A stretch of 64,000 nt of DNA. It comes from Pocillopora damicornis. Taxonomy: Eukaryota. This document shows, one piece after another, positions 1 through 26,600 of the stretch. The position numbers and the translations under genes are program-made. The notes below the pieces were generated by a model. The model searched no databases, was not told the origin of the DNA, and saw only the letters and a program-made list of their open reading frames with translations. Within the stretch, counting starts at the first letter, position 1; each line of letters starts with the position of its first letter. The DNA lies in contig NW_020844752.1 of assembly GCF_003704095.1 (NCBI RefSeq), forward strand, positions 1 through 64,000. The letters run 5' to 3'.

Positions 1-61
1 ACAGCGAGTTAATCCCAACGGCAGCATCTACAAAATAAATATGTCCTATCAAAAAGCTTAC

Positions 62-601
62 CTGCTTGTTGAGATTTGTAGCGGTGTCTATTTTGAAACA
101 TTGGATTTTCAAAGCCTCACTTTCGTTCTCAGGCGTTTCTGGTAGATTAAAATATTTTGTACAGTTCGTTGCAAAGTAGGTTAGAGGATTCCATGTTCTC
201 CCAGAGTCATTTGACTTCAAAAGGTACATTGCAGCCGGTAACTCGTGAAAAAAAGTTACCATAGACTGATACGGCATGAAAGTTCTTCGAACCTCTTGCT
301 GTAGAACAACAGGAAACTCGTAGTTTTTTGACTTCCAGAATGTATTGTCTCTAAAGTCGTCGTTTACAAAGTTAGCAGGATGTTTACGTTTCTCGTCGGA
401 CGCATTGCAAATTTTAGTGCAATCCAAGCCAACGCAGTATTGCTCTGACGGGTTACCGCAAGTTGAGTTCGCCGTAACATTAAAATGCTTTGAAATGTTC
501 AAAGGAGAAGGATAGCAAGGTCCAACACTACACGAATCTTGGCCCGAAACAGGTGCAAATATCGCAAATAAACACAACGCGACAAGTAGGTTCGAAGACA
601 C
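62..601 (-). CDS. 5' coding exon of a laminin N-terminal (LamNT/domain VI; netrin/laminin/usherin-like) secreted protein; gene continues off the left edge
   Basis: Hand translation of an open minus frame (62-649): VSSNLLVALCLFAIFAPVSGQ (signal-like) then DSCSVGPCYPSPLNISKHFNVTANSTCGNPSEQYCVGLDCTKICNASDEKRKHPANFVNDDFRDNTFWKS...PAAMYLLKSNDSGRTWNPLTYFATNC...NKQ. These are typical LamNT motifs (ANSTCG, HPA, TFWxS, KSxDxGxTW). Phase-0 donor CAG|GTAAGC at 62/61. No in-frame ATG upstream of the signal-like segment. Confidence 0.8.
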
Positions 602-847
602 AATTCGAACGCGGTTGCGATACCAAGCGTCCCCAGATTTGCCACATTCTCAATATCAAAACTGTTATCTTCCTCTTTCAATATTATTATGGATGTGATT
701 CCGTTCTTATTAACTTGATTTTACAATGCTGTCGGATGACTTTTGTGCTATAGTACCCTGAACTTGATTGGGGAGTGAAATAAATAAGGCTTGGCGCACT
801 TTTCACGGTTGATTACATGCCCGATGGGGATTGGAAGAATTCAGGAA

Positions 848-8003: not shown

Positions 8004-9430
8004 TTATATGGAAAACGGACTCTACATTTATCATCTTTTTATTACTGTGATATGCTACATGTACCGAAAATAATTTTCAACTGAACTAAACACAGATTAT
8101 ATCTACTATGATGTTATCGTATATTCCGTTCAACCCGCTTCACCGCGTGACATCTTATGTGACCAGCACACAAATGCGTCACGTAAACCAAGAAGCGAGA
8201 TCTGGTAAAGCAGAATATACTTAGCACCAAGCGAGAACAAATAATCTATCTAAGCCCGTGGGAACAAAGTAGAAGCATTATTAATCATCACTTTCGGACA
8301 AACGAATGAAAATGAACAACGATAGTCGAACAAACATTATCGCACATATTTATTGAGACCAGATTTCTGCTTCATAGAAGCAATTAGCTAAACCGTACGG
8401 AAAAGCGACCTTAAAACTACACGACGTGAAAATCTCAAAGGCTTTGTATGATTAACTCAACGCACGCATAAGATAATGATAACTAATGTCAATATGTTTA
8501 AGCCATCAGTAAAATGGTCATTTGATGAATGCCACAAAAAAAGGGACAACCTTCCCAACGTGATGTTTTTAACGCAGTCAATTCAAAGCTGAAACCAAAA
8601 AAGATCTTTAGGTTTGGAGGTCTAAATTCTTCCTATGCAGCCTTTCCTTCGCTTTGAACTGATTTCCTCTAACCTCATTGGTTAGCTGCTCTGTGTGTCA
8701 TAGCCAATCAGATTTTTTTTTTTTTTTTGCATGACATTTCTGAAAAAAATTAGCACCGATGTGTCTTCTCTTGAAATCGAGTGTCGCAGTTGCATTGTCA
8801 CCTAGCTTTTTTAGAGTCTAAAGAGAATCTAAGCGAAAATGAGACATTATGATACGATCCCTGGCTAGCGAGTACTGGGACTCACTTTGTCGTGATGTAG
8901 AGCAATTAAGAAACATGTTGAATACAAAGAACAACTACGTTTCAACATATAAATATTTACAAGCAACAATGTCATATTTAAAACTTAAAAATTTCCTATA
9001 CAACAATTCTGTCATCCTTTGTGCAATATGCCGTCTGAATTTGAACGTGTTCCGCTGGACCAAAGCAAGTCACGGCATTTGTGAAACAAAGTTTCAATAA
9101 ATATTCTAATTTTCCAAGAAACTTGTTCAGATTTGATCCGTCATCGTCTCTTGTCACTAAGGCTCTGAGGAAATCTAAAATATAACAATGAATGTTAGAC
9201 ACAACAAATAGCACTACAAATCGTATGCAAACTAAATTATCCCTGGCTATTTTCAATACAACTGAATTTGGCTGACACGTCAAAAAGGAAAAACCCCTTG
9301 AACAAGGAAGGAGCGAAAAAAACGACGAAGCTTCATTACTTAAAACCACGTGAAAGGAAACGAAGATAGGTCCAAAAACGGAAGATAAACATAAAAAAAA
9401 AAATTCTTTAGTTCATCTTACCTGTAAGCT

Positions 9431-12400
9431 TTATGTTATAGGCTCTTTGACTGCTCGTATAACTTGTATGTTTCCATTATCCATAACAGAGGCTATCTCG
9501 CTTACCGGTGAATGATAAGTTTGTCTGAAGACCTAAAAACAATGTTAAACACACGCGATAAGCAACAAAGACGTGGAAGAAAAGCCAGAGAGAGCAACGA
9601 AGAAAAATAGTAACAAACACCACGCGTCAATTAATTTAAAGAGGCCGTCAAAAAAACTGTACAGCATAACAATTCCGATCTCACATTTAATAAGCATTTT
9701 GGTTTGAGAATAAGGAACTCATTATCGTAAAATATATATTGTCTTGAGTACTACCGTATTCTTAATGAAAATCCTCACATACAAAAGAGGAAAAGAGTAA
9801 TTGCCATAGGTACATTCACTGAGAGTTTTAAGAGGGAGGAGGCTGTGGACCACATAGATCGAAGTCTTTATTGAAAGACAAATTAAAACAAAGTTGAAAC
9901 AAGGAAAATGTGAATATTCTTACCTGAGGTCCAAAGGAGGGTTTTCCCTTTTTCTCTCTGTATATCAAGTAAGCTATAAAAGTTCCCATGGCGACGGCAA
10001 AAGTGCCGAATACAACGCCAAGAGCTATGATACCACCATCACTGACACCTGTTGCTTTAGGCGGTTCGGTTACAGCAGATTCCTTTACACTGTGAAGGGT
10101 AAAAATAGAACCAAATAAGCAACATTACACTTCGAATCAAGCCAAAAATAGTTTTAGGTCTTGCAAACATATAGTGTTCTAGTAACTGGCGAGTGAAAGA
10201 AAGAAAGGCGAAAAAAAAAAAAAAACTATGGTAACTCGAATTAATACCTTGGTGAGTGGTGATCACTCGGGGTATTTAGGCTCCCTCCTGGCCACACAAT
10301 TTTTTTCCTTATACTGAGTCCATGATCCGGGGAGGGGTCGTAAGAACCAACTTTCACCCATGAATCTCCATTTAGGTTCACAACATCATAAATTGCCGGC
10401 GCATCTTGATTGGAATCGAAGAACTGTTTTCTTCCGGTTGAGCTGTCAAATCCTGTACTTGCGTCTTTCATTTTGCGTAATTCTGTCATTATCTCCTTTT
10501 GCACGTCCGCACGGGAGGAGTACTGCGAGGCGGAGAGCGTTTGGATGAATAACATTCAAGGGGGGGGGGGGGGNNNNNNNNNNNNNNNNNNNNNNNNNNN
10601 NNNNNNNNNNNNNNNNNNNNNNNNNNNNNNNNNNNNNNNNNNNNNNNNNNNNNNNNNNNNNNNNNNNNNNNNNNNNNNNNNNNNNNNNNNNNNNNNNNNN
10701 NNNNNNNNNNNNNNNNNNNNNNNNNNNNNNNNNNNNNNNNNNNNNNNNNNNNNNNNNNNNNNNNNNNNNNNNNNNNNNNNNNNNNNNNNNNNNNNNNNNN
10801 NNNNNNNNNNNNNNNNNNNNNNNNNNNNNNNNNNNNNNNNNNNNNNNNNNNNNNNNNNNNNNNNNNNNNNNNNNNNNNNNNNNNNNNNNNNNNNNNNNNN
10901 NNNNNNNNNNNNNNNNNAGAACAGCATCTTAGATTGGGGTCCTTTAGCTCAAAAATTGTAAACGTAATTTTTAGACCTTTAGTTCGTAACTGGATTTAGT
11001 TTTAAACAAACTTACCTTATTTATGGTTCCCGCTTCATGAAGTCTTGTTAAAGCATGCGCATAAGCAAGAACAGAATCATAGACCTGAGCAACATAAGCT
11101 GAAGCCTGTGGAATGAATGTTACCAGAAGTTAACACTTGGATAATATAATTAAGACGCCGATCTCTCTCTACTTCTGGTGAAAACTCTGTAAACTTGGGT
11201 TAAAATACGATTGAATTTCAAGAGCATACAGAATACAGTTTCAGCGATTTAATCTGGTTAAATCTATTAACTTAAAAAAAAAAAGAAAAAAAAACCTTAC
11301 ATCAAAAAGGAAGTCGTTGGGAAAGATGGGAGAAGTGCGGATAAGATAACGAAAATACAAACGAACCTGTAGCACTCTAGGAGAATGGATAGGACCAGGG
11401 TACATGGATGCGTCTTTTTCTTTCCAGGTCTTTAGCAGTTTTTGGTAAAGTGCTCCTTCACCGTGTTTAGGCCTGGTGCCTACCATACCCTGCATTGCTA
11501 GTTGTAAGTTGGGGGACTCCACGAATGGTGATGTGGTAGCACCGTCAGTTCCAATCCACGTCCACCCTTTACCGGTCATACTCTGGTAACGGGAAAAAAA
11601 AAAAGAAACAATGTGACAACGGAAGACAAACACAATAAGCCATGTGAAATTCTAACACAGCTCCAAGGCTAGGGGGGAATAAAACAAAATAAATTAATTA
11701 TTCATCCCTCATTGTCAATGTGATTTCTTACGTTTCATTTCCCCAAGCCACGGAGCCAAGTATTAATGATATTATATCGAAAATGGCCTCTTCAAGCCAG
11801 GAAGGGAGGAAGAGGTTCTTTAAAACAGGAATATTCTCCTCCGAGTAAAACGATAGTATCTGAGTAATAAATCTACTGAACCCCCAATATGTTGGGTAGA
11901 TAACAATGACAAATCAATTTGTTACCTGTTCTATCGCTTCTTGAAAAACTTTTTCTGCGTCATCAGTCGTGGCACTAACCAAGTTTACTGCTGTCCCAGC
12001 TTTCTTTATCTGTTCAAAGAGACATTTGTTATAAATTTTGTTTCGTTGGAAATGAGATAAGGAAATTTTGAACACGATTTCGTTACCCCTCTGAAGGGAG
12101 TACCAAGGAAAGCCGAAAAACGAAGGNNNNNNNNNNNNNNNNNNNNNNNNNNNNNNNNNNNNNNNNNNNNNNNNNNNNNNNNNNNNNNNNNNNNNNNNNN
12201 NNNNNNNNNNNNNNNNNNNNNNNNNNNNNNNNNNNNNNNNNNNNNNNNNNNNNNNNNNNNNNNNNNNNNNNNNNNNNNNNNNNAAGCAATGTGCAATAAG
12301 CTTTCAGTGGCTGCCTGTAGTAATTATACATACACTGGTGCTAAGTGTCTCACCTCTTTAAGATATTCCTTGATACTCAATTTTGTTTGCGCTTCAAACC

Positions 12401-15400
12401 GTTGCTCAGTGACAATGTCGACTCCTTTCTTCCGCACTTCTACGGCAAACTTACGAGCGAGCTCTTCACTGTACAGATCAAGTGTCGTTACAGTGGACAA
12501 TTGCGTCCACTTGTATCTTTCAACCAGCTTAGCCAGAGCTTTCCCTTGGAACACATCAGAAGCGCATGTGCGAAAGAGGTGTGGATAATTCTTCTTGTCT
12601 GATAGTAGCGCAGACGTGGAAGCGTACGACATTTGAGGAATATTCTTTTGTTTCGTGGCTTCAGCAATTGCGATGGAACAGGCCGACCTGGCTTCTCCGA
12701 TGATAAGATCCGCGTCGTCCGGAAGATTCTGAAAGAAAAGACATAGTGGTCGACTCACATAACCAATACATTAACCAGCAAGTTAGAGATGACAATAAAT
12801 CATCTCATCAGCTGTAGGGTGATATCTTTATAAAAACCATTCCGAACTAATTCACAGAACAAATAAGCAATTAAAGCCGACAACCTAACGGCGAAAACCT
12901 TGACGAATTGAGTTTAAGTTATTATCCTACCTGTGCTGCACGTCGGCAAGTTTCCGCATTTTCTCCTCCATCAACAAGAACATAGCTAAAGGCCACCTTG
13001 AAAGGGCCCGTATTTACGAGCTCCACAGCGATCCTGAAGGCTGCCTGCCACTCTAGCCCCAAGTCCCTTAACGGCCCAAGATCTTCATGAGTTGGAAAGA
13101 AAGCGGCGATCTTGTAAGTTGGTCGATCTTTGCCAGGAATCCTTGTCACGCCACCAGGGAACACTATATCTCTTCTCAAACCGATTTTCTTTGTTTTGGA
13201 GTCGTACTGACCGACCGTAATCCAATTGTTACCCTGAAGGATCAAGAATATTCTCGCGTTCAACAATTAGATTCAAGTTCTTAAGACATCGTATTGTTTA
13301 TTTCGTGTGCATATTTTTTTTCCTCCACGTTATTTAAATGGCCGTTTTGTCATTGACAAATTTTCATCACGTTGGATTTCTATGGAAAGTTTGTTCCATC
13401 ATTTGTCTGATATGTGGTATAAGTTTCTCCTTACGAAGTTTTAAGTGTCCTTTAACCTTCACGATTTCAGTTTTTTGGAAGTTTCTCGTTGACATACTTC
13501 ACAGGGTCGTGTTAAACCTCTCCAATCTCATATATGCTTCTCTCCATCTGCTCATGCTTACATATTGATGTCTACCATCAATGGGAACCTATCATTTGAA
13601 GATTTCACTCAAAACTCCCTTAAAACAACATTAAGTACTTACCACAAGATTAACAACATCGTACAGAGGAGGGGGATCTTGATTCTGATCGAAGTACATC
13701 ACATTGTTGGTACCAGTCGCGCTCGGATATCCTGAACTGAAGTCATCAAATGTTCTTAACTTCTGATACAGTTCGTCTCTCACAGTCTGCACGTCTGATG
13801 TTCTGCTAATGACTTTCTTATTGACCAGGTCTGACAGAGCCAGAGCCACACCATGTACTGCATCAAACAGCTGCGCAGTGAATGCCGCTGACATGGGAGT
13901 CTGGATGAACAGAGATGCAATAACGTAAGTAAGCAAAACTGATAACAGTTTAAAAAAAACAAATCACATCAACCTTTACAATTTTCCTAAAACAAAGGTG
14001 TGGTTGTAGAGGATATTATCAAGGATGCATGTATAAATTAAACGCCTCTTTTCCCCGAGAAATTTTCCTGTTTATCTGTTTTTACTTGAAGTAAAATTCA
14101 CTATTCTTGTGATGGTTTCAACGAAGTTTGAGTGATGAGACCCCAATATCAATGTGATTTTAATGCAAAGGATACCAACTAAGCGAGACGAATTATACAT
14201 TTATATCTGTACTACTTACACTCACCGGCTTACTGTGTACAATTCCAGGATACGTTGTGGAGTCTTTCTTGAGCCAAGCTGCCAGAAACTTCAAATAAAT
14301 ACTTCCCTCTCCATTCTTCGGCTGTGTTCCTATCATACCTTCCATAGCCCGTTCCAAGTCTTTCTGTTGGTTGAAAGTGGAAGAGGTTGCACCGTCGGTT
14401 CCAATCCACACCCAGCCTTTACCCGTCATGCCTAGCTCTTTGATCTGTTGGAAGACCGTCTCAGCATCCTGACGAACCATGCTGATGAGGTGGACTTTTG
14501 AACCAGACGATTTCAGCTAGAAAACGGAAGACAAACTGGTAAGATATAATTCATGGTATGGCAAGAAGGACAAATAGCTGAACTATGAAATTGAACTTTT
14601 TGAATGTGTTTACTTTCTTAATGAAATTTCAGCCGGGTCAAATCGAGGAAACTAATCTCACAGTCGTATGGCGATTATAATTGTCTGCACCCCAAATTTC
14701 AGGCCGAATCGAAAGGCTCAATTACCTTTTGTATTTTTGGTCGGACGGTGGCTGCTCGTGCATTTACATCGAACCGTTGACTGCTGACCACACTGACCGG
14801 CACATCAGCCATGCCTGTGACTTCTTTTTCAAACATGTCCGCAAGATCTTTTCCGTAAATATCGTTTGTAGCCACAGTGCCGACCTCCGGGAACATGTAC
14901 TTTCGGAATAAAGCTGAGAGAACGGCAGCTTGATGCACATCAGATGGGCAAGTCCTAAAGAAATACTTGTAACTGGTCTTGTCCGAGAAGACGGACGAAG
15001 TGGAGCCATAGGAGATCTGAGGTATTCTGTTGGTTGAAGTTCCTGAGAATGGAAATAGGAGTAGGAAAATGAACCCTTTACACCATAACATCAGTATTCA
15101 TATTCTCCATACTGTTCTCTAGACATTTCCTAAGGCGCTGACAAGAAGAATTTGACTAACAATCAAGAGATTCTTTCGTTGGTGATCATTTCCTTTATTC
15201 TCCTGACCTTGATGTTTGATTTAGGGATAATGGTAAGGAGAAAGTAGATGCCAGTCACTCTTAGACAGTACCACACAAGGTTACAGAGGAAAAACCATTC
15301 ATTAGACACCCACAGGTTGAACAGATAAGTCCTTAAATGAAGACACCACATGTAAAGGTTAGAGGGCATTTGCTTCGGTCGTTAGCAAAATTGTTGTCCC

Positions 15401-18400
15401 TTATATGCAGGTATACCCTGAAAAGAGGAGTCTTAATAGAGTGGTTCTATTATCATACATCTCTGCAAGTAGAGAGGGGTGGAGGCGGTATACTCGCGCC
15501 CTCTGAGTAACCGTCAGCAGAAAAGGCTAGATATAAATTCAGTGCTGGCTGAAAATGCCATGGACAGATTCCTTTCTTCGTGATTGCCTGTCTTGTAGCA
15601 GTTACACCCCTCATCAGTGATGTGTACTTTTTACTAAATAAAGATAATGTACCAAGTATACTGCGAAATCAATGGACTGTTGTGGAACTCACCTAAAACA
15701 GTAGCAGCGGCTTGAGAGCATGAAGAACGATAAGCACCAATAACAGCAACGACGCCGTCTTTCGCAAGTTGATCAGCCGCCGCTCTGCACGAGGAATTAG
15801 CATCTACACCGCCATCTTGAATTTTGATATCGAAATCCACTGCCAACGTTGGGTCCTTGTTCATCATCTCCACAGCAACGCGAAAAGCCGATTCAAACTC
15901 TTTACCGAGTTCGGACAGTCCTGCCAAATCTGGGTGAATCGGGGCGATGAAACCGATTCTAAACGTCGTCTTACCGGGTAGTCCTTTGTCAGTTGGTGGA
16001 ATTTTGGTATTGCCTGGCCAAATGATGACATCCATTCTTTCGACTCCGATGGTTTTGTTCCATTTCCCCACCTTTTTCCAAAGCTTTCCCTGAAGGAGGC
16101 GGAACGAAGTGGTTATTGCCTTTTATCACTAGCTAATAGCAATCGCTTATAGTTTGTTCTCGAGAATTGGAATTGTTTATCAATGAAGATTCATTACAAA
16201 TCAAGGAGTACCAGACAAGTTATATAGGAGTGAGAGTGGATGCGCAACTGTATTTCTAGAAATACAACTGCGGTGGTATCATAACCTGATGTTAGGTGTC
16301 TAGAATATTCAAGGGGCTGCTGTTAGTGATTTGTTTTCCTACTGCTTAGTGATCAAGTATCTGTGATAGAGTACAAGCGAGGGTTGTGAGCAGGATCCAA
16401 AACATTCATCGACAAAAAACAATAAAATATGGAATGAGAAAAAAAGACAGACTCGGTTGATTCTAACCTGAAGATTTCCAACATCATATCCTGGAGACTC
16501 GAAGTAAGTGGGACCTTACGAAGAAAAGAAAGCTGATCAGTTTTCCCTCTTACCTTCAGTACCTATCATGTACGACTGGAAGACTCTCACCGGTCGTGAT
16601 AAAACAATCGCTATCGAGATCGTTAAATTGATGTATTCTGAACTACTACTCCGTTTTCAAAATCTGAACGCTGTACGAAATTGTAAAACTTAAAAAACAT
16701 GATATTGGTTTAATGTTCCATCCTTATGAATCTCTGTCGTACCTTGAGCACCGACAAATCCTGTGTTTTTATTGTTGAATTTCTTCAACTCATCAAAGAC
16801 CACCTTTCGTAACGTTGACGTAGAGTCGCTCTGCGAAAAACGAAGAAGAGGGAAGAAAAAATATTAATTAACTCCACTAAGATTGAGCGCAATGCATTAC
16901 TTCCGATATTACCCCGAGAATAACACTGTATTAACCGATGAAATAATATTGTATTTACCGAAGATATTTTGCCTTGTCTTGCTAATCTGTCAAAAGCCAA
17001 GTAATAAGCATAAACAGCATCAAACACTTGTGGGACATACACGGACGTCCAAGGCATCTAAAAGGTGCAAAGAAAAAAAAGCTATTATGACTGGAGTTTA
17101 CAATGGTCAAACCCCTAATTAATACATTACACGCAGAGAGAGATGCATCAATTGATAGACCCCACTTTACGCGATTGCCTTTAAATGAAAGGTAACAAAA
17201 TCAAAAGGCCAAGCAGTACAGAGTTAAGTACTGCAAAGAGTAATCAAAAATTCAAACTAAATACAAGCAAATTTCCCGACTGAAAAAATTAACCCGGTTG
17301 CGATCGATTAAGTGAGAGTTTCCTGAATCAAACAAAACGCACAGTAGAGCGAACCTCAAAAATCCCACGTTATTATTTTCGACGCTCAACTGAAAACCGT
17401 TGTAGAGTAGAGTAAGAACAACCCGGCACGAAATTTTTCAGCATTAAACATATACTGCCCGTATTCAGACGTACATTGTCATAAATAATTCCTGGATACT
17501 GTTTCCTGTTGTCTTTGTGTTTCATCCACCTGAACAGCATTCTGAGAATCCATTTTCCTATCCCTCCTATAAAAAGAGAGTGAAATAAAAATTGAACGCG
17601 GTGAAGGCAAATTAACCTCAAGGAAGGATAACACCTCTCTCAGTCGATCAAAATAGGCTTTTTGCTTTTCGATGTACTCGACCTGCAGCTTGAATTTTGA
17701 TCACGTACCTTTGGGCATAGTTCCCACAGTTCCTTGCATTGCTTGTGTAGCTGTGCTCTGATTGGTCGGTGGAGTAGCCAGGACACCATCACTTCCTATC
17801 CACACCCACCCCTCCCCAGTCATACCCTGCAAGGAAGGAAGTATAGAGACACGCAAGAACAAATTAAAAACATGATAAAATAATCTTAGCCACAAAGCCC
17901 AATTGGTGACCAAACTCTAAAAATTGATATGGATATTCTCCACACTGTTCTCTAAAAATATTCCTAAAGTACTGACAAGGAGAATTTAACGTTTAACCCT
18001 TTACACCCTAACATTAACATGCATGTTCTCCATACTTTTCTCTTTACATTTCCTGAGGTGCAAAGAGAATTAGTTTCAAAATTGAAAGAGTCTTTAGTTA
18101 GTGATCACTTCCTTTATTCTCCTGACCTTAATGTGTGATTCAGGGGTGATATTGAAAGGAGAAATTAGATGCAAGTCACTCTTGAGGGTCAAAGGGTTAA
18201 ATGTGAAATCTCTTGTAGGCTATCATATCCCTTTTTCTCATAACTTTAATGATTGATTTATCTGTGATTCTGCAAGGAGAAATTGGATGTTAATCACTCT
18301 TTGGTGTTGAAAGGTTAAGACAATATGGTTAATATTAGGAATCAAAGAAGCAAACGTCCAGCGAATGTTAGAAATCTTGAATCTAACGACAGTTGAATAA

Positions 18401-21400
18401 CAACCGAAACAAACATCACTAAAATGACTGTAAGTCATCACTCTAAGTCACCTTTGCTTTTGCAGCTTTAAATATGGCGCGGGCTTCTTCTGGTAAGGCA
18501 AACACGAGGTTAACTCTCGTTTGAGCATCTTTTAGCTACGAGATTAAAACATAAAAAACACTTAAGATCAAAATAACAACAGCTTGAGAGAAGAAGTAAA
18601 GAGCTTTAATTACGAAATAAACAAATGTGCCATTTCCTACGCGATTTTGCGATGATCTCATGCTAATCCCGATAATCAGGATGCAAAGTATAATCCCGGT
18701 TGACAATCAACGACTCTCAGCGAAAATCCAGAAGGAGGGTCTTATAATACGTGACCAACATCGTTAGGTGATAATTTGTCAGGGTGGAGAGAGTGGGGGT
18801 CCAATAATAAGCACATCAATAATCAAGCGTTTTAGGTATTTTCACACCTTAGATTATTTTAAAGTGGATTTACACAACAGAAACAATCCGTTGAGAAAAA
18901 AATCCAGAAAGAACAAAAGATAAGAGTTTACCTTCAAAGAGAAAGCAATTCATTTTGGCACCAATCTGTCCCGATAAAGACAGTCTGTGTTTCCAATTGT
19001 GACTAATTTTAGCTTTGGTCAAGTTAAAACTCGTTTATAAACAACGATGATGCAATTTCAAAGCCATTAACACCATTTCAGGGTGGTAACAAGACGTGTT
19101 GTGTAACCATTCGACTCTTAAGTAAACATCGATTACTTGACAAAACAAAACAGTTTTGAAATGACAAGCTGCACAAACCACATTGACTTCGCTAGAAAGG
19201 TTTCCATCAAAACTTTGACACACATGCTTTAAATGCCATTTCGGTGTATGCTTTTAAACTCCACCCTTCAAATACTAATGTCAACAAACCATTTTGATCA
19301 AAATAAAAGAAAGTCCCTCACCATTTGAACTTTGCTGTCTATATCTCCTGAGGTTGCCATAGCTGGTAATCGTGCAGATGCATGGATTCTAATTCCTTGC
19401 AATCGCGCAGCTGTTTCAAAAGCATCAGCCAGGTTTTTACCATACCCGTCAGACGTAGCAATGGTACTGACCTACGTGGTAAGACAAAAGGAACTATTAA
19501 GGAAATGAGGGAATGTTTGCAATTTCGGACAACAAGCAGCCTCAACCCAAGGAATTTTTTGTTGGTAATGCAGAACATTTAGAAGGTTGTGGGGCGAAAC
19601 TCGTGTCTACTATATGAAAAAAACAAAAAAAAATGATGTATCATTTATCTTAGAAATACAATGTTAGCAACATTTTAACTCATTCATCCACGCGTTTTAT
19701 GTAGATGTAGCACTTACCCTCTTCGCGTACCAGGTTCTGGAAAGAATATACTTATCATTACCCGAGAATTTCTTAACTCAATCCTTTAAAACTTTTCTGA
19801 TTGTTTGACGGAATAGTTCTTAGATCAAATTATATTACCATTATATTCGCCTCAAAAAGAACAAATTCCAAGTGAGTAGGGGTAAAGCTTAGTTAAAGGA
19901 AAAATACTTCTTTAAACGTAGAGTTAGGCAGAACCAAGTAGAGGACATAACCATTTATGAATCAAAAACATGCAGGGAGCAACTCACTTCGGGTTCTAAG
20001 CAAAGCCATTACTAAGACTAATTCCACGGCTGAGTTGTACCCCACATATTCAAACATGCTACACTTAAGACAACGAACTTTACATGTACCTATTACAACG
20101 CATCTCCATTTACTCATGAATTATTTTTTGGTTGAACCGGGCCTGTTAGCACGTAGTAAAGGTGTTCTAAAGCAGACGCCAAGTTGATACTTACTCGTCT
20201 CCAGTTAAAAAGAGTCACCAACCCAACCAAAGCTTCTGCCTGGGCAACGTCACTGGCGCACGTTCTGAAGAATCGAGGATATTTCTTCTTATTGGACAAC
20301 TCTGCTGCCGTTGACGCATAAGATATCTGAGTCATGAACGGCGCTAAAAGAGAGCCATACAAAAAAGACTGTTAATGTAAGACAGTTCACCCCCATCGTA
20401 GCCAGCTATAAATCATTTTTTATCAAATATACGTTAACACATTTGTCGGGGCGTTTTCACTTTGTCTTCACTTTCGACGCCACTTTCTTAGGTCACAATC
20501 AAACGTGTTAACGCTAGCAAAAACGTGTCTGATGTTTCACGATTTCATCGCCTCGTAAAAGTCGACATCAGGTTGTGTCACTGACACTTTCTGCTGTCAT
20601 GCACTATCGTTACGTGAAGTAAAAGGGGCCAGTCTTTAACACTTTATTGTTGTGCCTTTCTGCTCTGTCATCTCACTACGCTCCTTCTTATGTTTGCGTC
20701 AGTTAACTGCAACTTTCATTAAGGGGAAAGAAACTGATTAGGGGTCCGGAGAGCTCCAGATCAGGGAAGGTTTTCCGTAACCAAATCGACTTCGAAAAAA
20801 AGCTTTAACTATTTATGATCTCTTGGTAAAACTGCATCTGTTATAAGCTGATAAAGTTTTTCTTTCAAGTTGTTGCAGCGTTACAGCGAAACATTTATAC
20901 GATGGTTTAAATTGGCACAACTGTCTTCCAATGTGTAAGTGCGATAAAATGAATATTTCAACTGTAATAAAATGTTGTAAATGGTTACATCCTATTTAGC
21001 TGCGTGAATCATACGCATACCATGTGATTCTTCTCTCTCAGATACCAGCACAATAATTATATTTCAAAATCAGAAGTACAATTCGGTGCCAAACAGTTTA
21101 CTTCTACGCCTTTTCTTAAACAAAAGTTTGCGAATAGCGAAGACTAATCAGGGAAAGAACCAACATTCGTATTTAAAATTGACACGCACGGTTACAAGAT
21201 GTGTCCTGATATCAAAACGAACTGAATATCTACGAATTTTTTCGCTCACCTTTGTCTCTGAAGTATTGATGAGATGCTTGGGAACAAGAGGAACGCATTG
21301 CTCCAACAACTCCAACAATGTCTGGATCGGCCGCTAGCTCCTGTGCAGCGATTTTACAGGTCTTTGATGGATTGGTGCCGCCATCTTTGATCATGGCTAT

Positions 21401-22710
21401 AAGGAGAAACATTGTAAACATTTAGAGAAGTGTGAAAAAGACCCCTTAACATAGCGCTACTACATATTATTAAGCTAAAATCATTTTAAAAGAGATGGTC
21501 CCTCTTTATCTCTAGATAAAAATGCGAATTTCATTGTAACAACACGCAACATTCCAGGTTGCTTTCTTGCCCATACTTGGCTACATGTTGGGAACAGTAG
21601 GCAGAAAATTTGAGAGTGCAATGATGCTTACAATACGTACTAGAACGATTATTAAGAAATTCATCTTTAACTTTCTACTCTTAATGAAATCTGTTTCAGG
21701 ATGTCTAGAACGAGACTATATCAGAGAAGAACAGTTATAAAAGTAGGCAGCCACTTAACCCATCATGGGAATAAATCAATAAATATGTGTATCTTCTAAT
21801 GTTCAGTGCTTGAACGCTCTACTATAACTCGATTAATAATTGGGTTGATTAATCTAATTATTCCCCAGATAATTTCAAACATAATTTCCCTGCTTTGAGT
21901 ATGCCAAATTTAATTTGTTCCTTTTTCTCAAAATGAACCTCACTCTTCAAAAATTTTCTAAGGAGAAACGTTACCTCACACACATAACATTATACCCTAA
22001 ACCATTCCCAATAGAGAAAAGATGAGTGAAACCAATTGATGGAGACCTCTCGGCCTTGTAACGAAAGAAATGTCATGGTTTTAATTAGGAAAAAGGATAA
22101 CCCTCACTCAAAAAAAGCGAGAAAGATCGCCAATTCTTGGCGCGCAAACACAAACGGAAAGGATCGTGATGGGATTGCTTTGTTCTAAAGTTTAATTCCC
22201 TCTCAAGCGTGTTCAAGAGTATAAGTAGGTGTTTTAAGCCAATTTACCACAAACAGTATAAAGTGAATTCTTACTTTTAAAATCCATCGAAAGTCTTATT
22301 TGACTGCCAACTTTCGGCTTGACAGCCTCTTCATTTATGACTTCGATTGCTACCTTGAACGCCGAGCTCTGAAAGTACAAAGCAATTAGGGTGAGTTTCA
22401 GGAACGTAGCAAACTGCTGGGTCACTAATAATCCTCAAGTAATAGGTAATAGCAAATTACTAACCAGTTCTTCTCCCAGCGATGCCGTGGCTCCAAGAGA
22501 GTTGTCTAAAGCGCCGATAAAGCCCAACTTGATAGTTATGTTCTTGGCTTCGACAGGTTCTGGGAACAAAACGGAGACGAAGGGATGAGGAATGTTCAGA
22601 AAATGGTTAAGTTCTTCGAGACCGCGTTTCAGAAATGGCAAAAGTGAAGCTTTAGATACTGGATTTAGAAGCAGACAAAGAAAAATGACTGCAAAAGTCG
22701 GCGCGTTCAT
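9431..22710 (-). CDS. Single-pass membrane protein with three tandem Venus flytrap (ANF_receptor/LIVBP-like, class C GPCR-type) domains, ~1395 aa, 23 exons
   Basis: Exons, all GT-AG and phase-compatible with no internal stops: 22710-22465, 22368-22275, 21396-21250, 20343-20195, 19471-19322, 18535-18452, 17826-17709, 17566-17475, 17057-16959, 16830-16743, 16514-16468, 16089-15693, 15042-14726, 14516-14226, 13900-13643, 13233-12931, 12728-12354, 12009-11926, 11582-11367, 11105-11016, 10522-10248, 10089-9924, 9532-9431. Signal peptide MNAPTFAVIFLCLLLNPVSKA. The motif set AFxxAxE / GxxRSxCS / QxSYxST...FRTCxSD / MTGxGWxWIGxDG / QxxDxV / Ix(W/F)PG occurs three times. TM GGIIALGVVFGTFAVAMGTFIAYLIY; tail REKKGKPSFGPQVFRQ...KEPIT*. 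Confidence 0.9.
10574..10917. other. Assembly gap (intronic; preceded by a poly-G run)
   Basis: Run of N. The flanking exons join in phase and align with the other repeats, so no exon appears to be lost. Confidence 0.95.
12127..12283. other. Assembly gap (intronic)
   Basis: Run of N. The flanking exons join in phase (YLKE|IKKA). Confidence 0.95.
13125..15970 (-). other. Venus flytrap domain 2 (approximate limits)
   Basis: TFRIGFIAP...GAYRSSCS...PQISYGSTSSVFSDKTSYKYFFRTCPSD...NDIYG...WIGTDG...AQLFDAVHG...IVFPGGVTRIPGKD. Confidence 0.85.
15070..15263. mobile_element. MITE copy (intronic)
   Basis: AACCCTTTACACCATAACATCAGTATTCATATTCTCCATACTGTTCTCT...GTCACTCTTAG matches the 7801/17993/28621 family. 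Confidence 0.75.
15990..22540 (-). other. Venus flytrap domain 1 (approximate limits)
   Basis: ITIKLGFIG...GAMRSSCS...QISYASTAAELSNKKKYPRFFRTCASD...SDGYG...WIGSDG...PQVFDAVYA...IIWPGNTKIPPTD. Confidence 0.85.
17993..18200. mobile_element. Full-length TTAA-flanked MITE, preceded by a partial copy (~17915-17990)
   Basis: TTAACCCTTTACACCCTAAC...GAGGGTCAAAGGGTTAA: TIR CCCTTT/AAAGGG bounded by TTAA. Confidence 0.8.
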
Positions 22711-23678
22711 GACTTGTAAAGAGACAGAAATGAATACAGTGAGGAACGAAAGGTAGGAAGGCCTCGAGCTGACGTGTTTACACTATCACGTTTCAAAGTA
22801 ACTTTACGGTAATACTATTTCTAGAAGACTCCAGTTCAGACCGGTAAGCTTTATCGATGGGGTAATGCTTTCCACTAACAAAAACAAAATGGTTAATTAT
22901 AGGATGGACAAGCAATGTTTAAAGTTTGATTTCCTGAGGTATTTCCTATTTGTTGTCATCCAAAAATCTTTTTCAGTTTGAACACTTGCTGAGCGAAATT
23001 TGAAGGTCTTTCTTGTGGGGACCCCAAGTGACTTTGTAGTACACTTTATATTATTATTTGATGGTGAAATAAGAAATAACTATTGAGGATTACATGGAGC
23101 CATCCCTAAAAACTGACACGTGAGGAAATTCTTCACAAGAGAAGTTTGACTTGTGAGTCACATCAATGGAATGTTATCCTCCCTTAGTAAAGATTTGTAG
23201 GAGTAGAAATATGGTGACTTTGCAACATTGAAAATACGAAAAATCAAATCATTTTTAACTGTTCAATTCAATGAACCTCAAGTGAAAGTTTCAAGCCGAA
23301 TAAAAGTTGGACCTTGCCCAATTAACGAGCCACCCTGAAAAGAGAGCTTTAATAAGCTTAACGCAGTCAACTACTGTGAGACAAGTACCCTGTCTTCTAG
23401 AATACAACCCAACAGATTACAAATAGTGCGCTGTTACATTGAATCTTGTTTAACACCTAGTTGAAGAACTCTATAGGCACTACAAAAACCAATTCCTTCC
23501 CGTGTGTCTCTAAAATTGTCTAGAAATGATTAATTACCCTTTGTGTTCAGGCGGCACGCAATGGGTCACCTTTTTTACTACAGGCCATCGCTTGCCCATT
23601 CTACAACACTTACCAACTTTAACTGCTGCAAGAACATATAGAATAAGAGAAATCTTCGCGAGAAACATTTTGTGAGAT

Positions 23679-26600
23679 TTAGCTGCTTAGCAAGGTTGTT
23701 GCCGTTTCACACTCTGAACACTTTTCAAGTGAGGAGGTCGTTAGCACCGGTAGGGTTAACCCACCGTTTTTAAATGCGTCAAACGGTTCCGCACGCGGAA
23801 ATCCGCATCCTTCAAACTTACTCCGCATACATTGCAACGCATTCTTTCTACTGAGCAATTTGGTCAACTTTTTTTCATGATTAGGTCTTCGCAACCTCCA
23901 ATGAGAAGGCTTAACGAACAATGACTTAAAAGTTCCAGAAATACATTTATCTTAACGATCATACCTACAGGAAAGACGAAGAAAGAAATGTTTTCAACAT
24001 CTTGACATTCCTCCAAGTTGAATAAACTAACCATTCTGTAAATTGACAAAGGGGTCAAAAAATCTTCAAAACAAACAAATGGTACAGGAGAGGAGGAGCT
24101 GTTTGTTCTGAAAAAATAACAGCTAAATAATCTGGTAACTATGGGTAAATAAGTCCATTTGAAAGAGAGAAAAAAAGGGGTAAAGCGAAAGCTCCATTCA
24201 TTGTTATATGTGTATCATCACAGAGGTTTCAATTTGGTACACATTTTAATAACAACCTGTACACGTTTGGAAATCATTCCAAACTCAACCGAGCTTTTTT
24301 TTTTTCGTATGAAGTGTCTCTTTGAGAAATTCAAGAGGCCGTTTAAAGGATTTTTCACCTCATCATTAGAAACAATCCAAAATAGCATTTAAAGATGTGA
24401 TTAAACCGATTGAACCTGAGAGATAAATCGTCTAAACCATCGCTCCACTTGTCCAATCGCATGCAGAAGAAACTCGATATGGATCGTAGCGTGTTGCTAA
24501 ACAGACAGAAACTATCTGCGCTAATCAGCCACTGACTGGCACGTTTCCTGATTAAGACAAAGGTGATGGAAAGACAGCATATCTATGTTTTGATTGTCAC
24601 ATAAATGGCCAATTTGAGGTCCAGCATAAAGGCGGTGCTCTGTGATAAGTGGGTCCCGTTCCTGAAGCATTCGTAGAATTTGCGATTCAGAGATAAGATA
24701 ATGGGATTGCGGTGTCCCTTGTTAACCGAGAAGGAAAAGTAGCAAGTGGACATTTATCACACACAAGAAACAATATTAAAGTTTCAAAACTTAATCCAAG
24801 TTATTGATTCAGGCTGCAAGAGTAAAATAAACTGAGTTGCGTTCGAGTCCGTGACGCTCAGAAAGATAAACACATATCAAGATCCAGACCTGACGCGTAA
24901 CTGTAAATTGACACCACGCAACAAGATGGCAACAGATCATTAATCATTATTGTTTGTCGGGTATAACAACTGATGAAATCCTGCTAACAAGGTTCTGCTT
25001 GGAAAATGTTTAACCCACTCGTGAAGCTCCATCAGTACGATGCACTTTCTTGCGCTAAGAAACAAAAAGTTAAACTGCATGATGGAAACAGATGCCTGCA
25101 CGGAAGATCGGGTGAAGACAAAGGAATGGCAACGCCCTAAAGAACAGACACTCTTTCTTTCATTTGTTACGTGGCGTCTTCAATTTGGGTGAGCGTTGCA
25201 TGTGCATGCTTTTTCTCTGATAAACATCTTTCTTGATTCTCCTTAAATAAAATTCTACCTTGTGAACAAGGCCAAAACCAAACTTGTTGATATTTGTATA
25301 TTGTAACGGCGAACCGATCTGTGAAATTGATTTGTGCTGAACCATGATGGAGTGATTCGTTTTCCCTTAAAGGAAAACGGTATTTCAGAGCATTTCAGGG
25401 CTTTCATCATAGTATAAGTTTCAGTTCATTTCTTGCAAATTACACCAAAGTCATTCAGCTACAGTTGAGCAAACAAAAGTCGGTTGAATACTGTCTTACT
25501 GTCCTCAGAGTGCTAAACCTTTCGCAACGTATAAACTTGCTGTAATTCTGGCTGTGATGTCTTCACAACATTCTACTTCATGTTTCACTTCTCAAACTAA
25601 AAAGTAACTTGTAAATTCGGCTCCAAAGAACATTTTTTCTTCGCAGATACGAAGTAAAACACAACATATAACTAACGCAGTTTTACATTATTCTGGTTGT
25701 TTCGAAGAGGTTTCATTCCACAGTTAATCTCCAGTGTTGGGCATCCTCAAATTGTTTTGGGATTACAGTGTTCTTACAAACAGGTGATTATAACTTCTAA
25801 GGCGAGAACCGTAGACCAATGATACATTTTTTTGGTAGGGTTTCTGTTAATGTTACATGAGTTGTATTCAGTGCTATTTGGAGCTGAAGTTGGTCAACCA
25901 CTCGGCTAACGAACAACATGTAGTTGCCTAAGATTGTACGCCTTCATCAAACAAAACAATATTCCACGGATGGTCTATTAACAACTTTCACACTTTAATG
26001 GAAGGAAGTAATCGATTGAATCTATTCTATTCCATGTTCGGAAGCTTAAATCTATTAGCAGGGGCATGCCACACAGACCAAGGCACTAGCTACTTAAGTA
26101 ATCACTGTATTACACGCGCCTTCGATATGCAGTTTGGTTTGCGATCATGATATTGGCGTCGAGAGCTTGAAAAAAAAACGCTACGTTATGATATTTCCGA
26201 GTAAATTCTTACGGTTAAGTTGTTATATATTTCTATTATGTTGTGCTAATTAATCGATTACATTCGATTATATTCAAAGTCGAAACGATCGCTTATCGCA
26301 AATTGAAAAATCGTTCTACAACTTGGCTACTTTCAATCGGTTTGAGTCCAAATTGAATTGTATGACAATTGCAATAGTAATTTTGCTGAGAATTACTGCC
26401 GCCATAAAGATGTATTATTCTTGTTTTAAAATTTAACCTTGAAATTTATTCTCCACGGGCCTCAGAACAACTTGGGCGATCTTCGTGGCAACAGGCACAC
26501 TTTTCAAAGTACTGAATTAAATGGCAGAACTCTATTTAACGCACTACAAAACTAAAACGCCGCTTCTAAATGGCTTCTACAAAGACGACATCTGATTAAG

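What the first reader, a model, noticed from the sequence alone, without database searches (positions are those of the whole stretch)
9431..22710. Triple Venus-flytrap, single-pass receptor with no 7TM, cyclase or channel domain
Seen: 23 phase-compatible exons give a signal peptide, 3 complete diverged VFT domains, a short P/T/E stalk, 1 TM helix and a ~45-aa tail ending at a stop. No further hydrophobic exons are apparent before the convergent gene. Established: animal VFTs normally occur once per chain, attached to a 7TM (mGluR, CaSR, GABA-B, T1R), an iGluR channel, or a kinase/guanylyl cyclase. Each unit ends in Ix(W/F)PG..P.(.)D without a cysteine-rich domain, as in GABA-B-type linkers. 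I know no characterised animal protein with this architecture. Inference: a multivalent amino-acid/metabolite sensor, co-receptor, scavenger or adhesion molecule that signals in trans, possibly in feeding chemosensation or symbiosis.
Basis: partly seen in the sequence, partly recalled or inferred. Interest (0 to 1): 0.92.

Follow-up and report, generated by a model that had tools for sequence, protein, structure and literature searches.

The report
Triple-flytrap single-pass coral membrane protein
A real, expressed coral gene encodes a membrane protein with three amino-acid-sensor (Venus flytrap) domains in a row, one membrane helix and a short tail; it is conserved across cnidarians but unstudied, so how it signals without a GPCR, channel or enzyme part is open.

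Summary
On the minus strand, 24 GT-AG coding exons (23668..9431) encode 1363 aa: signal peptide, three complete ANF_receptor flytraps (36-42% identical to each other), a P/T/E/S stalk, one TM helix with a GxxxG motif, and a 47-aa tail. A 5.3-kb cDNA contig and RNA contigs from four studies confirm the splicing and the stop codon. Both N gaps lie inside introns. No 7tm_3, NCD3G, kinase or cyclase domain is found, and no 7tm_3 match lies on the whole contig.

The gene is not unique. It is single-copy here and matches Pocillopora verrucosa LOC131795997. Same-length "uncharacterized" orthologs occur in stony corals, sea anemones, an octocoral and jellyfish. A sponge protein has the same layout. 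Other tandem-flytrap proteins occur in molluscs, echinoderms, nemerteans and protists. I found no paper on any of them.

All three flytraps keep the alpha-amino-acid-binding pentad but replace the glutamate-selecting Arg with Leu, Phe or Trp. The scan's note s1-762956 says the same of this stretch.

Best reading: a multi-site sensor of neutral amino acids that signals through partner proteins. That function is inferred, not shown.

The parts
31679..31825 (-). Alternative first coding exon (RefSeq isoform X2 type): basic N-terminus followed by about 25 hydrophobic residues, which looks like a signal anchor
   Evidence: tblastn of the P0151 N-terminus, 96% over 49 aa. An open frame is seen at 31601-31912.
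23614..23694 (-). First exon of the cDNA-supported isoform: 5'UTR from 23694, ATG at 23668, and a classical short signal peptide
   Evidence: L005 maps 1-81 to 23694-23614 at 100%. Exon model.
22560..22710 (-). It is an upstream extension of exon 2 with its own signal peptide.
   Evidence: tblastn of the P0152 N-terminus, 22710-22546, 95%. A homologous N-terminus occurs in another coral transcript, P0178.
15988..22551 (-). Flytrap 1 (residues 22-440), split over exons 2-13. Pentad S117 T142 D162 Y190 D271; the Arg78-equivalent is Leu50.
   Evidence: Exon-wise Pfam, Pfam on P0001, exon model, alignment to mGluR7, coordinates.
13126..15987 (-). Flytrap 2 (residues 441-863), exons 13-17. It is the slowest-evolving unit. 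Pentad S528 T553 D573 Y601 D685; the Arg78-equivalent is Phe471.
   Evidence: Exon 13 (16089-15693) is one open frame running from the end of flytrap 1 into flytrap 2.
10262..13125 (-). Flytrap 3 (residues 864-1270), exons 17-22. Pentad S943 T966 D986 Y1014 D1094; the Arg78-equivalent is Trp889.
   Evidence: Exon 17 (13233-12931) is one open frame running from the end of flytrap 2 into flytrap 3, and is covered whole by RNA contigs.
12127..12283 (.). Assembly gap inside intron 18 (12010-12353)
   Evidence: RNA joint 12009 to 12354 in four runs, and the contig letter count leaves no extra letters.
10574..10917 (.). Assembly gap inside intron 21 (10523-11015)
   Evidence: RNA joint 10522 to 11016 in four runs, and the contig letter count leaves no extra letters.
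10035..10261 (-). Stalk rich in P/T/E/S (residues 1271-1293); it spans the exon 22/23 junction
9966..10034 (-). Single transmembrane helix (residues 1294-1316) with a GVVFG (GxxxG) motif conserved in Hexacorallia
   Evidence: Hydropathy peak 2.26, tail alignment, and a helix at the equivalent place in the AF2 model of the Acropora ortholog.
9431..9965 (-). Cytoplasmic tail of 47 aa (residues 1317-1363), split over exons 23 and 24, with stop TAA at 9433-9431
   Evidence: RNA contigs cover 9422-9530 with no differing letters. Tail conservation is shown.
9175..9421 (-). 3'UTR intron (GT..AG) that begins 9 nt after the stop codon
   Evidence: Joint 9174 to 9422 in all four RNA runs and in L005.
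8030..9174 (-). Terminal 3'UTR exon. AATAAA lies at 8043. All RNA contigs carry a 32-nt insertion relative to the assembly at 8817/8818.

Best explanation
Shown: this is an intact, expressed, single-copy Pocillopora gene, the counterpart of P. verrucosa LOC131795997. It encodes a type I membrane protein made of a signal peptide, three tandem class-C-type Venus flytrap (ANF_receptor) domains joined head to tail by linkers of a few residues, a short stalk, one TM helix and a 47-aa tail. It has no effector domain. The three units arose by duplication inside one intron-bearing gene before the last common ancestor of cnidarians.

Inferred: each flytrap still closes on a small alpha-amino-acid-type ligand. 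The side-chain pocket lacks the basic residues that select glutamate. It carries a unit-specific Leu, Phe or Trp instead. The three sites therefore probably read neutral or hydrophobic amino acids with different preferences.

Inferred further: having no transducer of its own, the protein passes occupancy on through partner proteins. The likely routes are lateral association through the GxxxG helix, the conserved tail, or flytrap-to-flytrap contacts. That makes it a ligand-binding receptor subunit in the manner of NPR-C or a co-receptor.
For: Gene model and expression:
- establish the model and its expression.
- RNA rows come from at least 6 studies.

Domain content:
- Three ANF_receptor domains and nothing else.
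- No 7TM-like sequence in the window and no 7tm_3 match on contig C1387.
- Single copy in the genome.

Fold and nearest relatives:
- mGluR is nearest by sequence at E 1e-24, and CaSR comes next.
- The AF2 model of the Acropora ortholog has mean pLDDT 76, and 85-95 in flytrap 2.
- That model matches mGlu8, CaSR and mGlu2/3 flytraps at E 2e-24 with TM-score up to 0.75.

Binding residues:
- The mGlu1 roles of Ser165, Thr188, Asp208, Tyr236 and Asp318 are taken from PMC2680970.
- The pentad is kept 15 of 15 in this protein. Across 45 units of 15 species, Ser is kept 45/45 and Thr, Asp208 and Asp318 each 42/45.
- The Arg78-equivalent is never basic. It is Leu or Met in unit 1, Phe, Leu or Tyr in unit 2, and Trp in every cnidarian unit 3.

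Age of the triplication:
- Units 1, 2 and 3 each form a clade across Anthozoa and Scyphozoa, with SH-aLRT 99 for all three.
- In the smaller tree the support is 99, 94 and 99.
- Intron positions and phases are shared between units. The repeat block is bounded by a phase-0 intron.

TM helix and tail:
- In Hexacorallia the GVVFG motif, the juxtamembrane R-E-K-K-G-K-P-S-F stretch and an S-P-V-x-E-I-S motif are conserved. The C-terminus is hydrophobic-x-Val in all but Pocillopora.
- Against Nematostella, the TM helix is 57% identical and the tail 45%, but the stalk only 17%.

Topology: ESM Atlas places the protein nearest NPR3 clusters, score 0.95.
Against: - No ligand, partner or cell type is known, so every functional step is inference from conserved residues.
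- The tail is not conserved in the octocoral, the jellyfish or the sponge. Pocillopora itself lacks the terminal hydrophobic-x-Val. Tail-based signalling therefore cannot be the universal mechanism.
- In jellyfish, units 1 and 2 have lost two to three pentad residues, so not all sites need bind ligand in all lineages.
- Inter-domain geometry is not resolved (pTM 0.47).
- The homodimer test of flytrap 3 gave no verdict.
- iGluR amino-terminal domains show that ANF_receptor folds can serve purely as protein-protein modules.
Confidence: 0.5

Rival explanations
1. Ligand sink or buffer. The protein binds free amino acids at the cell surface and only sequesters, presents or internalises them, like the clearance role of NPR-C. 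It does not signal.
For: It has no effector domain. Its topology and language-model features are nearest NPR3, the clearance receptor. The ectodomain is far better conserved than the tail outside Hexacorallia.
Against: Stoichiometric binding is a poor way to clear abundant small molecules compared with transporters. The TM helix and tail are strongly conserved between stony corals and sea anemones, which argues for specific intracellular or intramembrane contacts.
Confidence: 0.17
2. Modulatory subunit of 7TM class C receptors. One or more flytraps pair with the flytrap of a conventional class C GPCR, much as GABA-B1/B2 or T1R heteromers do, and tune or gate that receptor.
For: The genome holds 30 or more mostly intronless class C GPCR genes. 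The flytraps are nearest mGluR and CaSR in sequence and fold. Class C flytraps work as dimers (established knowledge; PMC2680970).
Against: There is no evidence of any pairing. The single complex job addressed only a flytrap 3 homodimer and gave no verdict. No class C GPCR lies next to the gene.
Confidence: 0.15
3. Adhesion or scaffold protein. The flytraps act as rigid protein-protein interaction modules, as iGluR amino-terminal domains do, forming a long stalk. The conserved pocket residues are structural.
For: Head-to-tail flytraps with linkers of about five residues would give a long ectodomain. Most hexacoral orthologs end in a hydrophobic-x-Val C-terminus that fits a class II PDZ ligand.
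Against: The exact ligand-contacting pentad has been kept in all three units across Anthozoa, and in unit 3 across all Cnidaria. Protein-binding ANF_receptor domains do not need it. Only four N-glycosylation sequons are present, and no adhesion-type domain.
Confidence: 0.12
4. Gene-model artefact: three neighbouring single-flytrap genes, or a class C GPCR whose 7TM exons were missed.
For: The Polypterus 'CASR, partial' database entries with up to 11 flytrap hits show that such fusions do occur in annotation. The contig ends 9.4 kb downstream of the gene.
Against: One 5.3-kb cDNA contig carries the whole ORF. RNA contigs of four studies span flytrap 2 to the 3'UTR. The two unit junctions lie inside single exons. 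The stop codon is followed by 1.5 kb of UTR with a poly(A) signal. There is no 7tm_3 match in the window or on the contig. Orthologs of the same length occur in 12 or more cnidarian species.
Confidence: 0.02

Closest known systems
Class C GPCR flytraps (mGluR groups II/III, CaSR)
   Same: They are the best sequence matches (mGlu4/8/7 at E 1e-24, CaSR at 1e-19; exon 18 against mGlu2 at 3e-17) and the best fold matches (TM-score up to 0.75). The Ser/Thr/Asp/Tyr/Asp alpha-amino-acid pentad is kept in all three units.
   Different: There is no 7tm_3 and no NCD3G cysteine-rich domain. There are three flytraps per chain instead of one. The glutamate-selecting Arg78 is replaced by Leu, Phe or Trp.
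NPR-C / NPR3 (natriuretic peptide clearance receptor)
   Same: Its topology is an ANF_receptor flytrap + one TM helix + short cytoplasmic tail without an enzyme domain. It is the nearest ESM Atlas cluster by features, score 0.95.
   Different: NPR-C has one flytrap and binds a peptide at a dimer interface (established knowledge). By sequence the coral units are nearer mGluR, and no NPR entry is in the top 60 PDB hits. The tail shows no evident relation.
GABA-B receptor subunits
   Same: The flytrap joins the next module without a cysteine-rich domain (PMC12716839). GABA-B2 is a weaker PDB hit, at 2e-11 for exon 18.
   Different: GABA-B has a 7TM domain and one flytrap. The sequence is closer to mGluR.
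Venus kinase receptors (VKR) and receptor guanylyl cyclases
   Same: They are single-pass animal receptors with an extracellular ANF_receptor-type flytrap. VKRs are activated by amino acids (PMC2680970).
   Different: They carry a kinase or cyclase domain and one flytrap. Here the tail is 47 aa with no domain.
Bacterial tandem-flytrap sensors (BvgS, EvgS, CdgH)
   Same: They have two periplasmic flytrap domains in tandem on one chain ahead of a TM segment (papers found).
   Different: Their flytraps belong to a different periplasmic-binding-protein class. They have cytoplasmic kinase or cyclase modules. They are analogues, not relatives.
Uncharacterized database proteins with the same or similar layout
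   Same: Orthologs of 1320-1410 aa carrying ANF_receptor only:
- P. verrucosa XP_058969623/4
- Oculina (85% identity)
- Desmophyllum (83%)
- Acropora (75%)
- Nematostella LOC5515302 (61%)
- Exaiptasia (60%)
- Dendronephthya (47%)
- Rhopilema (41%)

Sycon ciliatum LOC135808291 also has three flytraps + 1 TM + a short tail.
   Different: None is characterised. One-to-one orthology of the sponge units is not resolved. Mollusc relatives (Haliotis, Bulinus) have two flytraps and long disordered tails. The Euglena, Hanusia, Rhodelphis and metagenome arrays are independent duplications.

Membership tests
ANF_receptor / class-C-type Venus flytrap superfamily (PF01094) | Match to PF01094 above the gathering score over the full bilobed domain | tested here: met
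   Three stretches, E 1e-149; the best covers profile positions 2-353 of 353. Exon-wise hits are collinear in three series. The fold matches mGlu8 and CaSR flytraps.
Class C (Glutamate-family) GPCR | 7tm_3 seven-helix domain (PF00003) | tested here: not met
   No 7tm_3 in P0001. No 7TM-like tblastn hit in the window below E 0.4. No PF00003 match on contig C1387. Only one C-terminal hydrophobic segment.
mGluR/CaSR/T1R subgroup | NCD3G cysteine-rich domain between the flytrap and the membrane | tested here: not met
   No PF07562 hit. Each unit has only three Cys.
Amino-acid-binding class C flytraps | Pentad equivalent to mGlu1 Ser165, Thr188, Asp208, Tyr236, Asp318 (PMC2680970) | tested here: met
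   All five are present in each of the three units of this protein. They are widely conserved in orthologs. Binding itself was not tested.
Glutamate-selective mGluR flytraps | Basic residues for the distal carboxylate (mGlu1 Arg78, Lys409) | tested here: not met
   The Arg78-equivalent is Leu50, Phe471 and Trp889, and is never basic in 45 units. In this protein there is no Lys or Arg at the Lys409 region. That region's alignment is less certain, and it is Lys in a few orthologs, such as Nematostella and Exaiptasia unit 1 and octocoral unit 2.
NPR-C (NPR3) | Single ANF_receptor flytrap + 1 TM + short tail | tested here: not met
   Here there are three flytraps, not one. The TM helix and short tail are as in NPR-C.
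NPR-C (NPR3) | Binds natriuretic peptides as a disulfide-linked dimer | not testable with these tools
   Peptide binding and dimerisation could not be tested here.
Receptor guanylyl cyclase / VKR / iGluR | Guanylate cyclase, tyrosine kinase or Lig_chan domain after the flytrap | tested here: not met
   Pfam finds none. The tail is 47 aa and disordered in the AF2 model of the ortholog.
Cnidarian triple-flytrap single-pass family (unnamed; LOC131795997 / LOC5515302 group) | Collinear full-length similarity, three units each orthologous to the same-numbered unit, one TM helix, short tail | tested here: met
   41-85% identity over 90-100% of the length to 14 orthologs. Unit clades have SH-aLRT support of 94-99. 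The TM helix and tail align.

The most novel reading that the evidence does not exclude
The triple-flytrap single-pass protein represents an old animal lineage (Cnidaria, the sponge Sycon, perhaps the two-flytrap mollusc proteins) of 7TM-independent flytrap receptors. In this reading it is a coincidence detector. It reads up to three different neutral amino acids on one chain. It then drives a separate transmembrane transducer through its GxxxG helix or flytrap contacts, which would be a 'split' alternative to class C GPCR signalling that 7TM-based receptor surveys miss.
Probability: 0.15. Interest if true: 0.8.

Novelty: new variant of a known kind. Interest (0 to 1): 0.6.

Why it matters
Flytrap domains are the ligand sensors of glutamate, GABA, calcium, taste and natriuretic-peptide receptors. 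In every studied animal case there is one per chain, wired to a 7TM, channel or enzyme module.

Here, three such sensors with intact amino-acid-binding residues sit on a bare membrane anchor. That layout has been conserved since before the last common ancestor of corals, anemones and jellyfish. So there is either an unknown way of coupling flytrap closure to the cell or an unknown non-signalling use.

Receptor surveys that search by the 7TM domain (for example PMC12716839) cannot see this family. Amino acids are classical feeding and settlement cues for cnidarians, so the protein is a concrete candidate for that biology. Nematostella has a clear ortholog and is genetically tractable, which makes the question directly testable.

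Tried and rejected
1. Complex prediction. A flytrap 3 homodimer (residues 864-1275, two copies) was tried. The machine was busy five times. The job then ran and returned no verdict. It is not evidence either way.

2. Structure. The first job failed. The second gave a usable fold per domain, but pTM is 0.47. I therefore draw nothing from the relative placement of the flytraps.

3. My own error, corrected. I first read the loose end at 8817 as the acceptor of a convergent plus-strand gene and the RNA contigs as chimeric. Mapping the cDNA contig showed it is a 32-nt indel within a long terminal 3'UTR exon. The plus-strand ORF 8843-9097 lies in that UTR and has no Pfam match.

4. 7TM exons. I found none in the window or on the contig.

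5. Headless 7TM genes as split partners. The short open frames with full 7tm_3 (C21, C2929) have flytrap exons just upstream, so they look like two-exon genes. C1390 was not checked.

6. Further relatives. The word-indexed search with an alignment and with the sponge protein added nothing. A blank there says little.

7. One-to-one orthology of sponge and cnidarian units. BLAST favours 2 with 2 and weakly 3 with 3, and is ambiguous for unit 1. The trees leave the long sponge branches unresolved.

8. Polypterus 'CASR/V2R partial' proteins with 3 to 11 flytrap hits. They have hydrophobic segments between units, so I take them for fused models of tandem receptor genes, not relatives in architecture.

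9. Literature. I searched for tandem or multiple flytraps in eukaryotes and for the gene symbols. Only bacterial BvgS, EvgS and CdgH turned up.

10. The joined window model. It was built only inside scripts, to compare with P0001. It was never sent to a search tool. Full-length searches used the database protein P0001, and window searches were done exon by exon by reference.

Full report
**1. Is it there?**

The window is AT-rich eukaryotic DNA. RNA and DNA runs that hold it are coral samples.

Stop-free segments on the minus strand between 9.4 and 22.8 kb carry three collinear series of ANF_receptor fragments. A whole-library HMMER search with exon 18 returned P0001, a 1363-aa ORF from a Logan cDNA contig.

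In a script I chained window exons against P0001. The result is 24 coding exons, all GT-AG, with a CDS from 23668 to 9431. It encodes 1363 aa and differs from P0001 at only two residues. The joined model stayed inside the script. Full-length searches used P0001, and window searches went exon by exon by reference.

The cDNA contig itself (L005, run ERR9592224, 5307 nt) maps collinearly to all 24 exons plus the UTRs. RNA contigs from four independent studies, laid on 8801-14800, show every predicted joint. All have CT..AC ends on the plus strand, which is GT..AG on the minus strand.

**2. The assembly gaps**

Gap 10574-10917 lies in intron 10523-11015. Gap 12127-12283 lies in intron 12010-12353.

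In RNA contig X1 the stretch between exon 10248-10522 and exon 12354-12728 is exactly 390 letters. That is the sum of the three intervening exons (89+217+84). So no exon is hidden in a gap and the frame is continuous. I did not read or fill the gaps.

**3. The ends of the gene**

*3' end.* The TM exon (10089-9924) is spliced to exon 9532-9422, which holds TAA at 9433-9431. RNA contigs show no differing letter in that exon.

Nine nucleotides after the stop a 247-nt intron (9175-9421) is removed. A terminal exon then runs from 9174 to about 8030, with AATAAA at 8043.

I first misread a loose end at 8817 as a convergent gene's acceptor. It is a 32-nt insertion, carried by all RNA contigs relative to the assembly.

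There is no 7TM-like sequence in the window. There is no PF00003 match on the whole contig C1387.

*5' end.* Three alternative first coding exons exist:
- 23668-23614, the cDNA type, with a short classical signal peptide.
- 22710-22560, an upstream extension of exon 2.
- 31825-31679, RefSeq isoform X2, which looks like a signal anchor.

Homologous alternative N-termini occur in other corals.

**4. Anatomy of the protein**

| Part | Residues |
|---|---|
| Signal peptide | 1-21 |
| Flytrap 1 | 22-440 |
| Flytrap 2 | 441-863 |
| Flytrap 3 | 864-1270 |
| Stalk | 1271-1293 |
| TM helix | 1294-1316 |
| Tail | 1317-1363 |

- Pfam finds three ANF_receptor stretches (E 1e-149) and no 7tm_3, NCD3G, kinase, cyclase or channel domain.
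- The units are 36-42% identical to each other.
- The two unit junctions lie inside single exons, 16089-15693 and 13233-12931. The tandem arrangement therefore does not depend on any splice.
- Each unit has exactly three Cys, in the same spacing.

**5. Origin of the three units**

Intron positions and phases are shared between units in the unit alignment:
- column 295, phase 0, in all three units;
- columns 326 and 480 in units 1 and 3;
- columns 432 and 536 in units 1 and 2;
- about column 183, phase 1, in units 1 and 2.

The repeat block runs from one phase-0 intron at column 536 to the next. This fits intragenic tandem duplication of an intron-bearing flytrap, followed by intron loss in units 2 and 3.

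In unit trees, units 1, 2 and 3 each form a clade containing stony coral, sea anemone, octocoral and jellyfish sequences. SH-aLRT support is 99 for all three in the large tree and 99, 94 and 99 in the small one. The triplication therefore predates the last common cnidarian ancestor.

Unit 2 evolves most slowly (branch lengths; identities).

**6. Relatives**

The gene is single-copy in this genome. All other matches are class C GPCR genes at about 30% identity, mostly intronless.

P0001's cluster holds P. verrucosa XP_058969623/4, named 'uncharacterized protein LOC131795997'. Full-length orthologs of 1320-1410 aa, carrying ANF_receptor only, occur in:

| Species | Identity |
|---|---|
| Oculina | 85% |
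| Desmophyllum | 83% |
| Acropora | 75-77% |
| Actinostola | 63% |
| Nematostella | 61% |
| Exaiptasia | 60% |
| Dendronephthya | 47% |
| Rhopilema | 41% |
| A second scyphozoan | 41% |

The calcareous sponge Sycon ciliatum has a 1383-aa protein with three flytraps, one TM helix and a short tail. Its units are nearest the cnidarian ones. BLAST favours 2 with 2. The long sponge branches leave one-to-one orthology unresolved.

Other tandem-flytrap proteins in the databases:

| Source | Layout |
|---|---|
| Haliotis, Bulinus (molluscs) | 2 flytraps + 1 TM + long disordered tail |
| Anneissia (crinoid) | 4 flytraps + 7TM |
| Tubulanus (nemertean) | 5 flytraps + 7TM |
| Unidentified eukaryote (metagenomes) | 3 flytraps + 7tm_3 |
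| Euglena | 4-5 flytraps + 1 TM |
| Hanusia, Rhodelphis, Flabellula | tandem arrays |

In the protists tested in the tree (Euglena, Hanusia, Rhodelphis and the metagenome proteins), the units of one protein cluster together. Those are independent duplications. Flabellula was not resolved.

The Polypterus 'CASR, partial' entries look like fused gene models.

Five full-text searches found no paper on any eukaryotic tandem-flytrap protein. They found only bacterial BvgS, EvgS and CdgH. Surveys that start from the 7TM domain, such as PMC12716839, cannot find this family.

**7. What the flytraps look like**

By sequence the nearest solved proteins are mGlu4/8/7 (E 1e-24), then mGlu2/3 and CaSR. For exon 18 alone, mGlu2 scores 3e-17 and GABA-B2 scores 2e-11.

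An AF2 model of the 1109-aa Acropora digitifera ortholog has mean pLDDT 76, and 85-95 across flytrap 2. It has a single long C-terminal helix and a disordered tail. Foldseek matches it to mGlu8, CaSR and mGlu5/2/3 flytraps at E 2e-24, with TM-score up to 0.75. pTM is 0.47, so I make no claim about how the domains are arranged.

**8. Ligand-site residues**

PMC2680970 gives the mGlu1 residues that hold the alpha-amino-acid moiety as Ser165, Thr188, Asp208, Tyr236 and Asp318. It gives Lys409 as a glutamate-specific contact.

I aligned 45 units from 15 species to a fish mGluR7, whose numbering gives R78, S159, T182, Y230 and D312.

- This protein keeps all five in every unit:

| Unit | Pentad |
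|---|---|
| 1 | S117 T142 D162 Y190 D271 |
| 2 | S528 T553 D573 Y601 D685 |
| 3 | S943 T966 D986 Y1014 D1094 |

- The Ser is kept 45/45. Thr, Asp208 and Asp318 are each kept 42/45.
- Unit 3 keeps nearly the full set in all cnidarians. Jellyfish units 1 and 2 have lost two to three positions.
- The Arg78-equivalent is never basic. It is Leu or Met in unit 1, Phe, Leu or Tyr in unit 2, and Trp in every cnidarian unit 3.

This agrees with the scan's note s1-762956, which I tested here. Binding of alpha-amino-acid-type ligands with non-acidic side chains, different for each unit, is therefore the most economical reading. It remains inference.

**9. Membrane anchor and tail**

In Hexacorallia the following are conserved:
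- the TM helix with GVVFG, a GxxxG helix-packing motif;
- the juxtamembrane R-E-K-K-G-K-P-S-F-x-P-Q-V-F stretch;
- an S-P-V-x-E-I-S motif;
- a hydrophobic-x-Val C-terminus. Pocillopora is the exception and ends E-P-I-T.

Against Nematostella, the TM helix is 57% identical and the tail 45%, while the stalk is 17%. Octocoral, jellyfish and sponge tails differ.

The ESM Atlas places the protein nearest NPR3 (NPR-C) clusters, score 0.95. NPR-C is the one well-known animal flytrap + 1 TM + short-tail protein.

**10. Mechanism and verdict**

*Shown:* a real, expressed, conserved single-pass protein with three class-C-type flytraps and no effector domain.

*Inferred, in decreasing confidence:*
- each flytrap binds a small amino-acid-type ligand;
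- the three sites differ in side-chain preference;
- occupancy is passed on through partner proteins, via the GxxxG helix, the tail or flytrap contacts.

*Rivals:* a non-signalling sink, a modulatory subunit of 7TM class C receptors, and an adhesion or scaffold role. A gene-model artefact is excluded for the main transcript. The one complex job, a flytrap 3 homodimer, gave no verdict.

*Classification:* the protein is a member of the ANF_receptor superfamily. It fails the defining tests for class C GPCRs, NPR-C, VKRs, receptor cyclases and iGluRs. I rate it a new variant of a known kind. It is already present in databases as 'uncharacterized' and is not unique in having tandem flytraps. It is unstudied, anciently conserved and directly testable in Nematostella.

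Noticed in passing
window 31679-31825, 23614-23668, 22560-22710 (minus strand): There are three alternative first coding exons giving three different N-termini: signal-anchor-like, a short signal peptide, and a long signal peptide. Homologous alternatives occur in other coral transcripts. The signal-anchor form would tether both ends of the ectodomain.
   Followed up: partly
window 8817/8818: All RNA contigs (four studies) and the cDNA contig L005 carry a 32-nt insertion in the 3'UTR relative to the assembly. This is an indel polymorphism or an assembly omission.
   Followed up: yes
window 9175-9421: A 3'UTR intron begins 9 nt after the stop codon and is spliced in all four RNA runs.
   Followed up: yes
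window exons 2-22, in the unit alignment: Intron positions and phases are shared among the three flytrap units. The repeat block is bounded by a phase-0 intron. Exons 13-16 total 1263 nt, so skipping them would stay in frame, but no such joint was seen in the part laid.
   Followed up: partly
window 2-649 (minus strand): An open frame at the contig start has a Laminin_N domain (E 1e-25). It is the first exon of a laminin- or netrin-type gene downstream of the finding.
   Followed up: no
window 60644-62441 (minus strand): Three exons match the EXS family (XPR1/SYG1-type phosphate exporter), E 1e-14 to 4e-21.
   Followed up: no
window 8843-9097 (plus strand): An 85-aa open frame that could be taken for the last exon of a convergent gene lies inside the 3'UTR of the flytrap gene and has no Pfam match.
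   Followed up: partly
P0011 and cluster (ENA metagenome contigs): A 1716-aa protein from an unidentified eukaryote has three ANF_receptor flytraps followed by a full 7tm_3 domain, so it is a triple-flytrap class C GPCR.
   Followed up: partly
P0113, P0191 (Haliotis), P0065 (Bulinus) and about ten similar representatives: Mollusc 'uncharacterized' proteins have two flytraps, one strongly hydrophobic TM segment near residue 1020-1055, and a disordered Q/P/S-rich tail of 100-800 aa.
   Followed up: partly
P0002-P0005, P0008, P0010, P0019 (Polypterus senegalus): 'CASR/V2R protein, partial' entries of up to 3927 aa carry up to 11 flytrap hits with hydrophobic segments in between. They are most likely fused models of tandem receptor genes.
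   Followed up: partly
Sycon P0021 C-terminus versus anthozoan tails: The sponge tail ends in F-S-P-V-N, which aligns with the anthozoan S-P-V-N/T/S-E-I-S motif. The match is short and could be chance.
   Followed up: no
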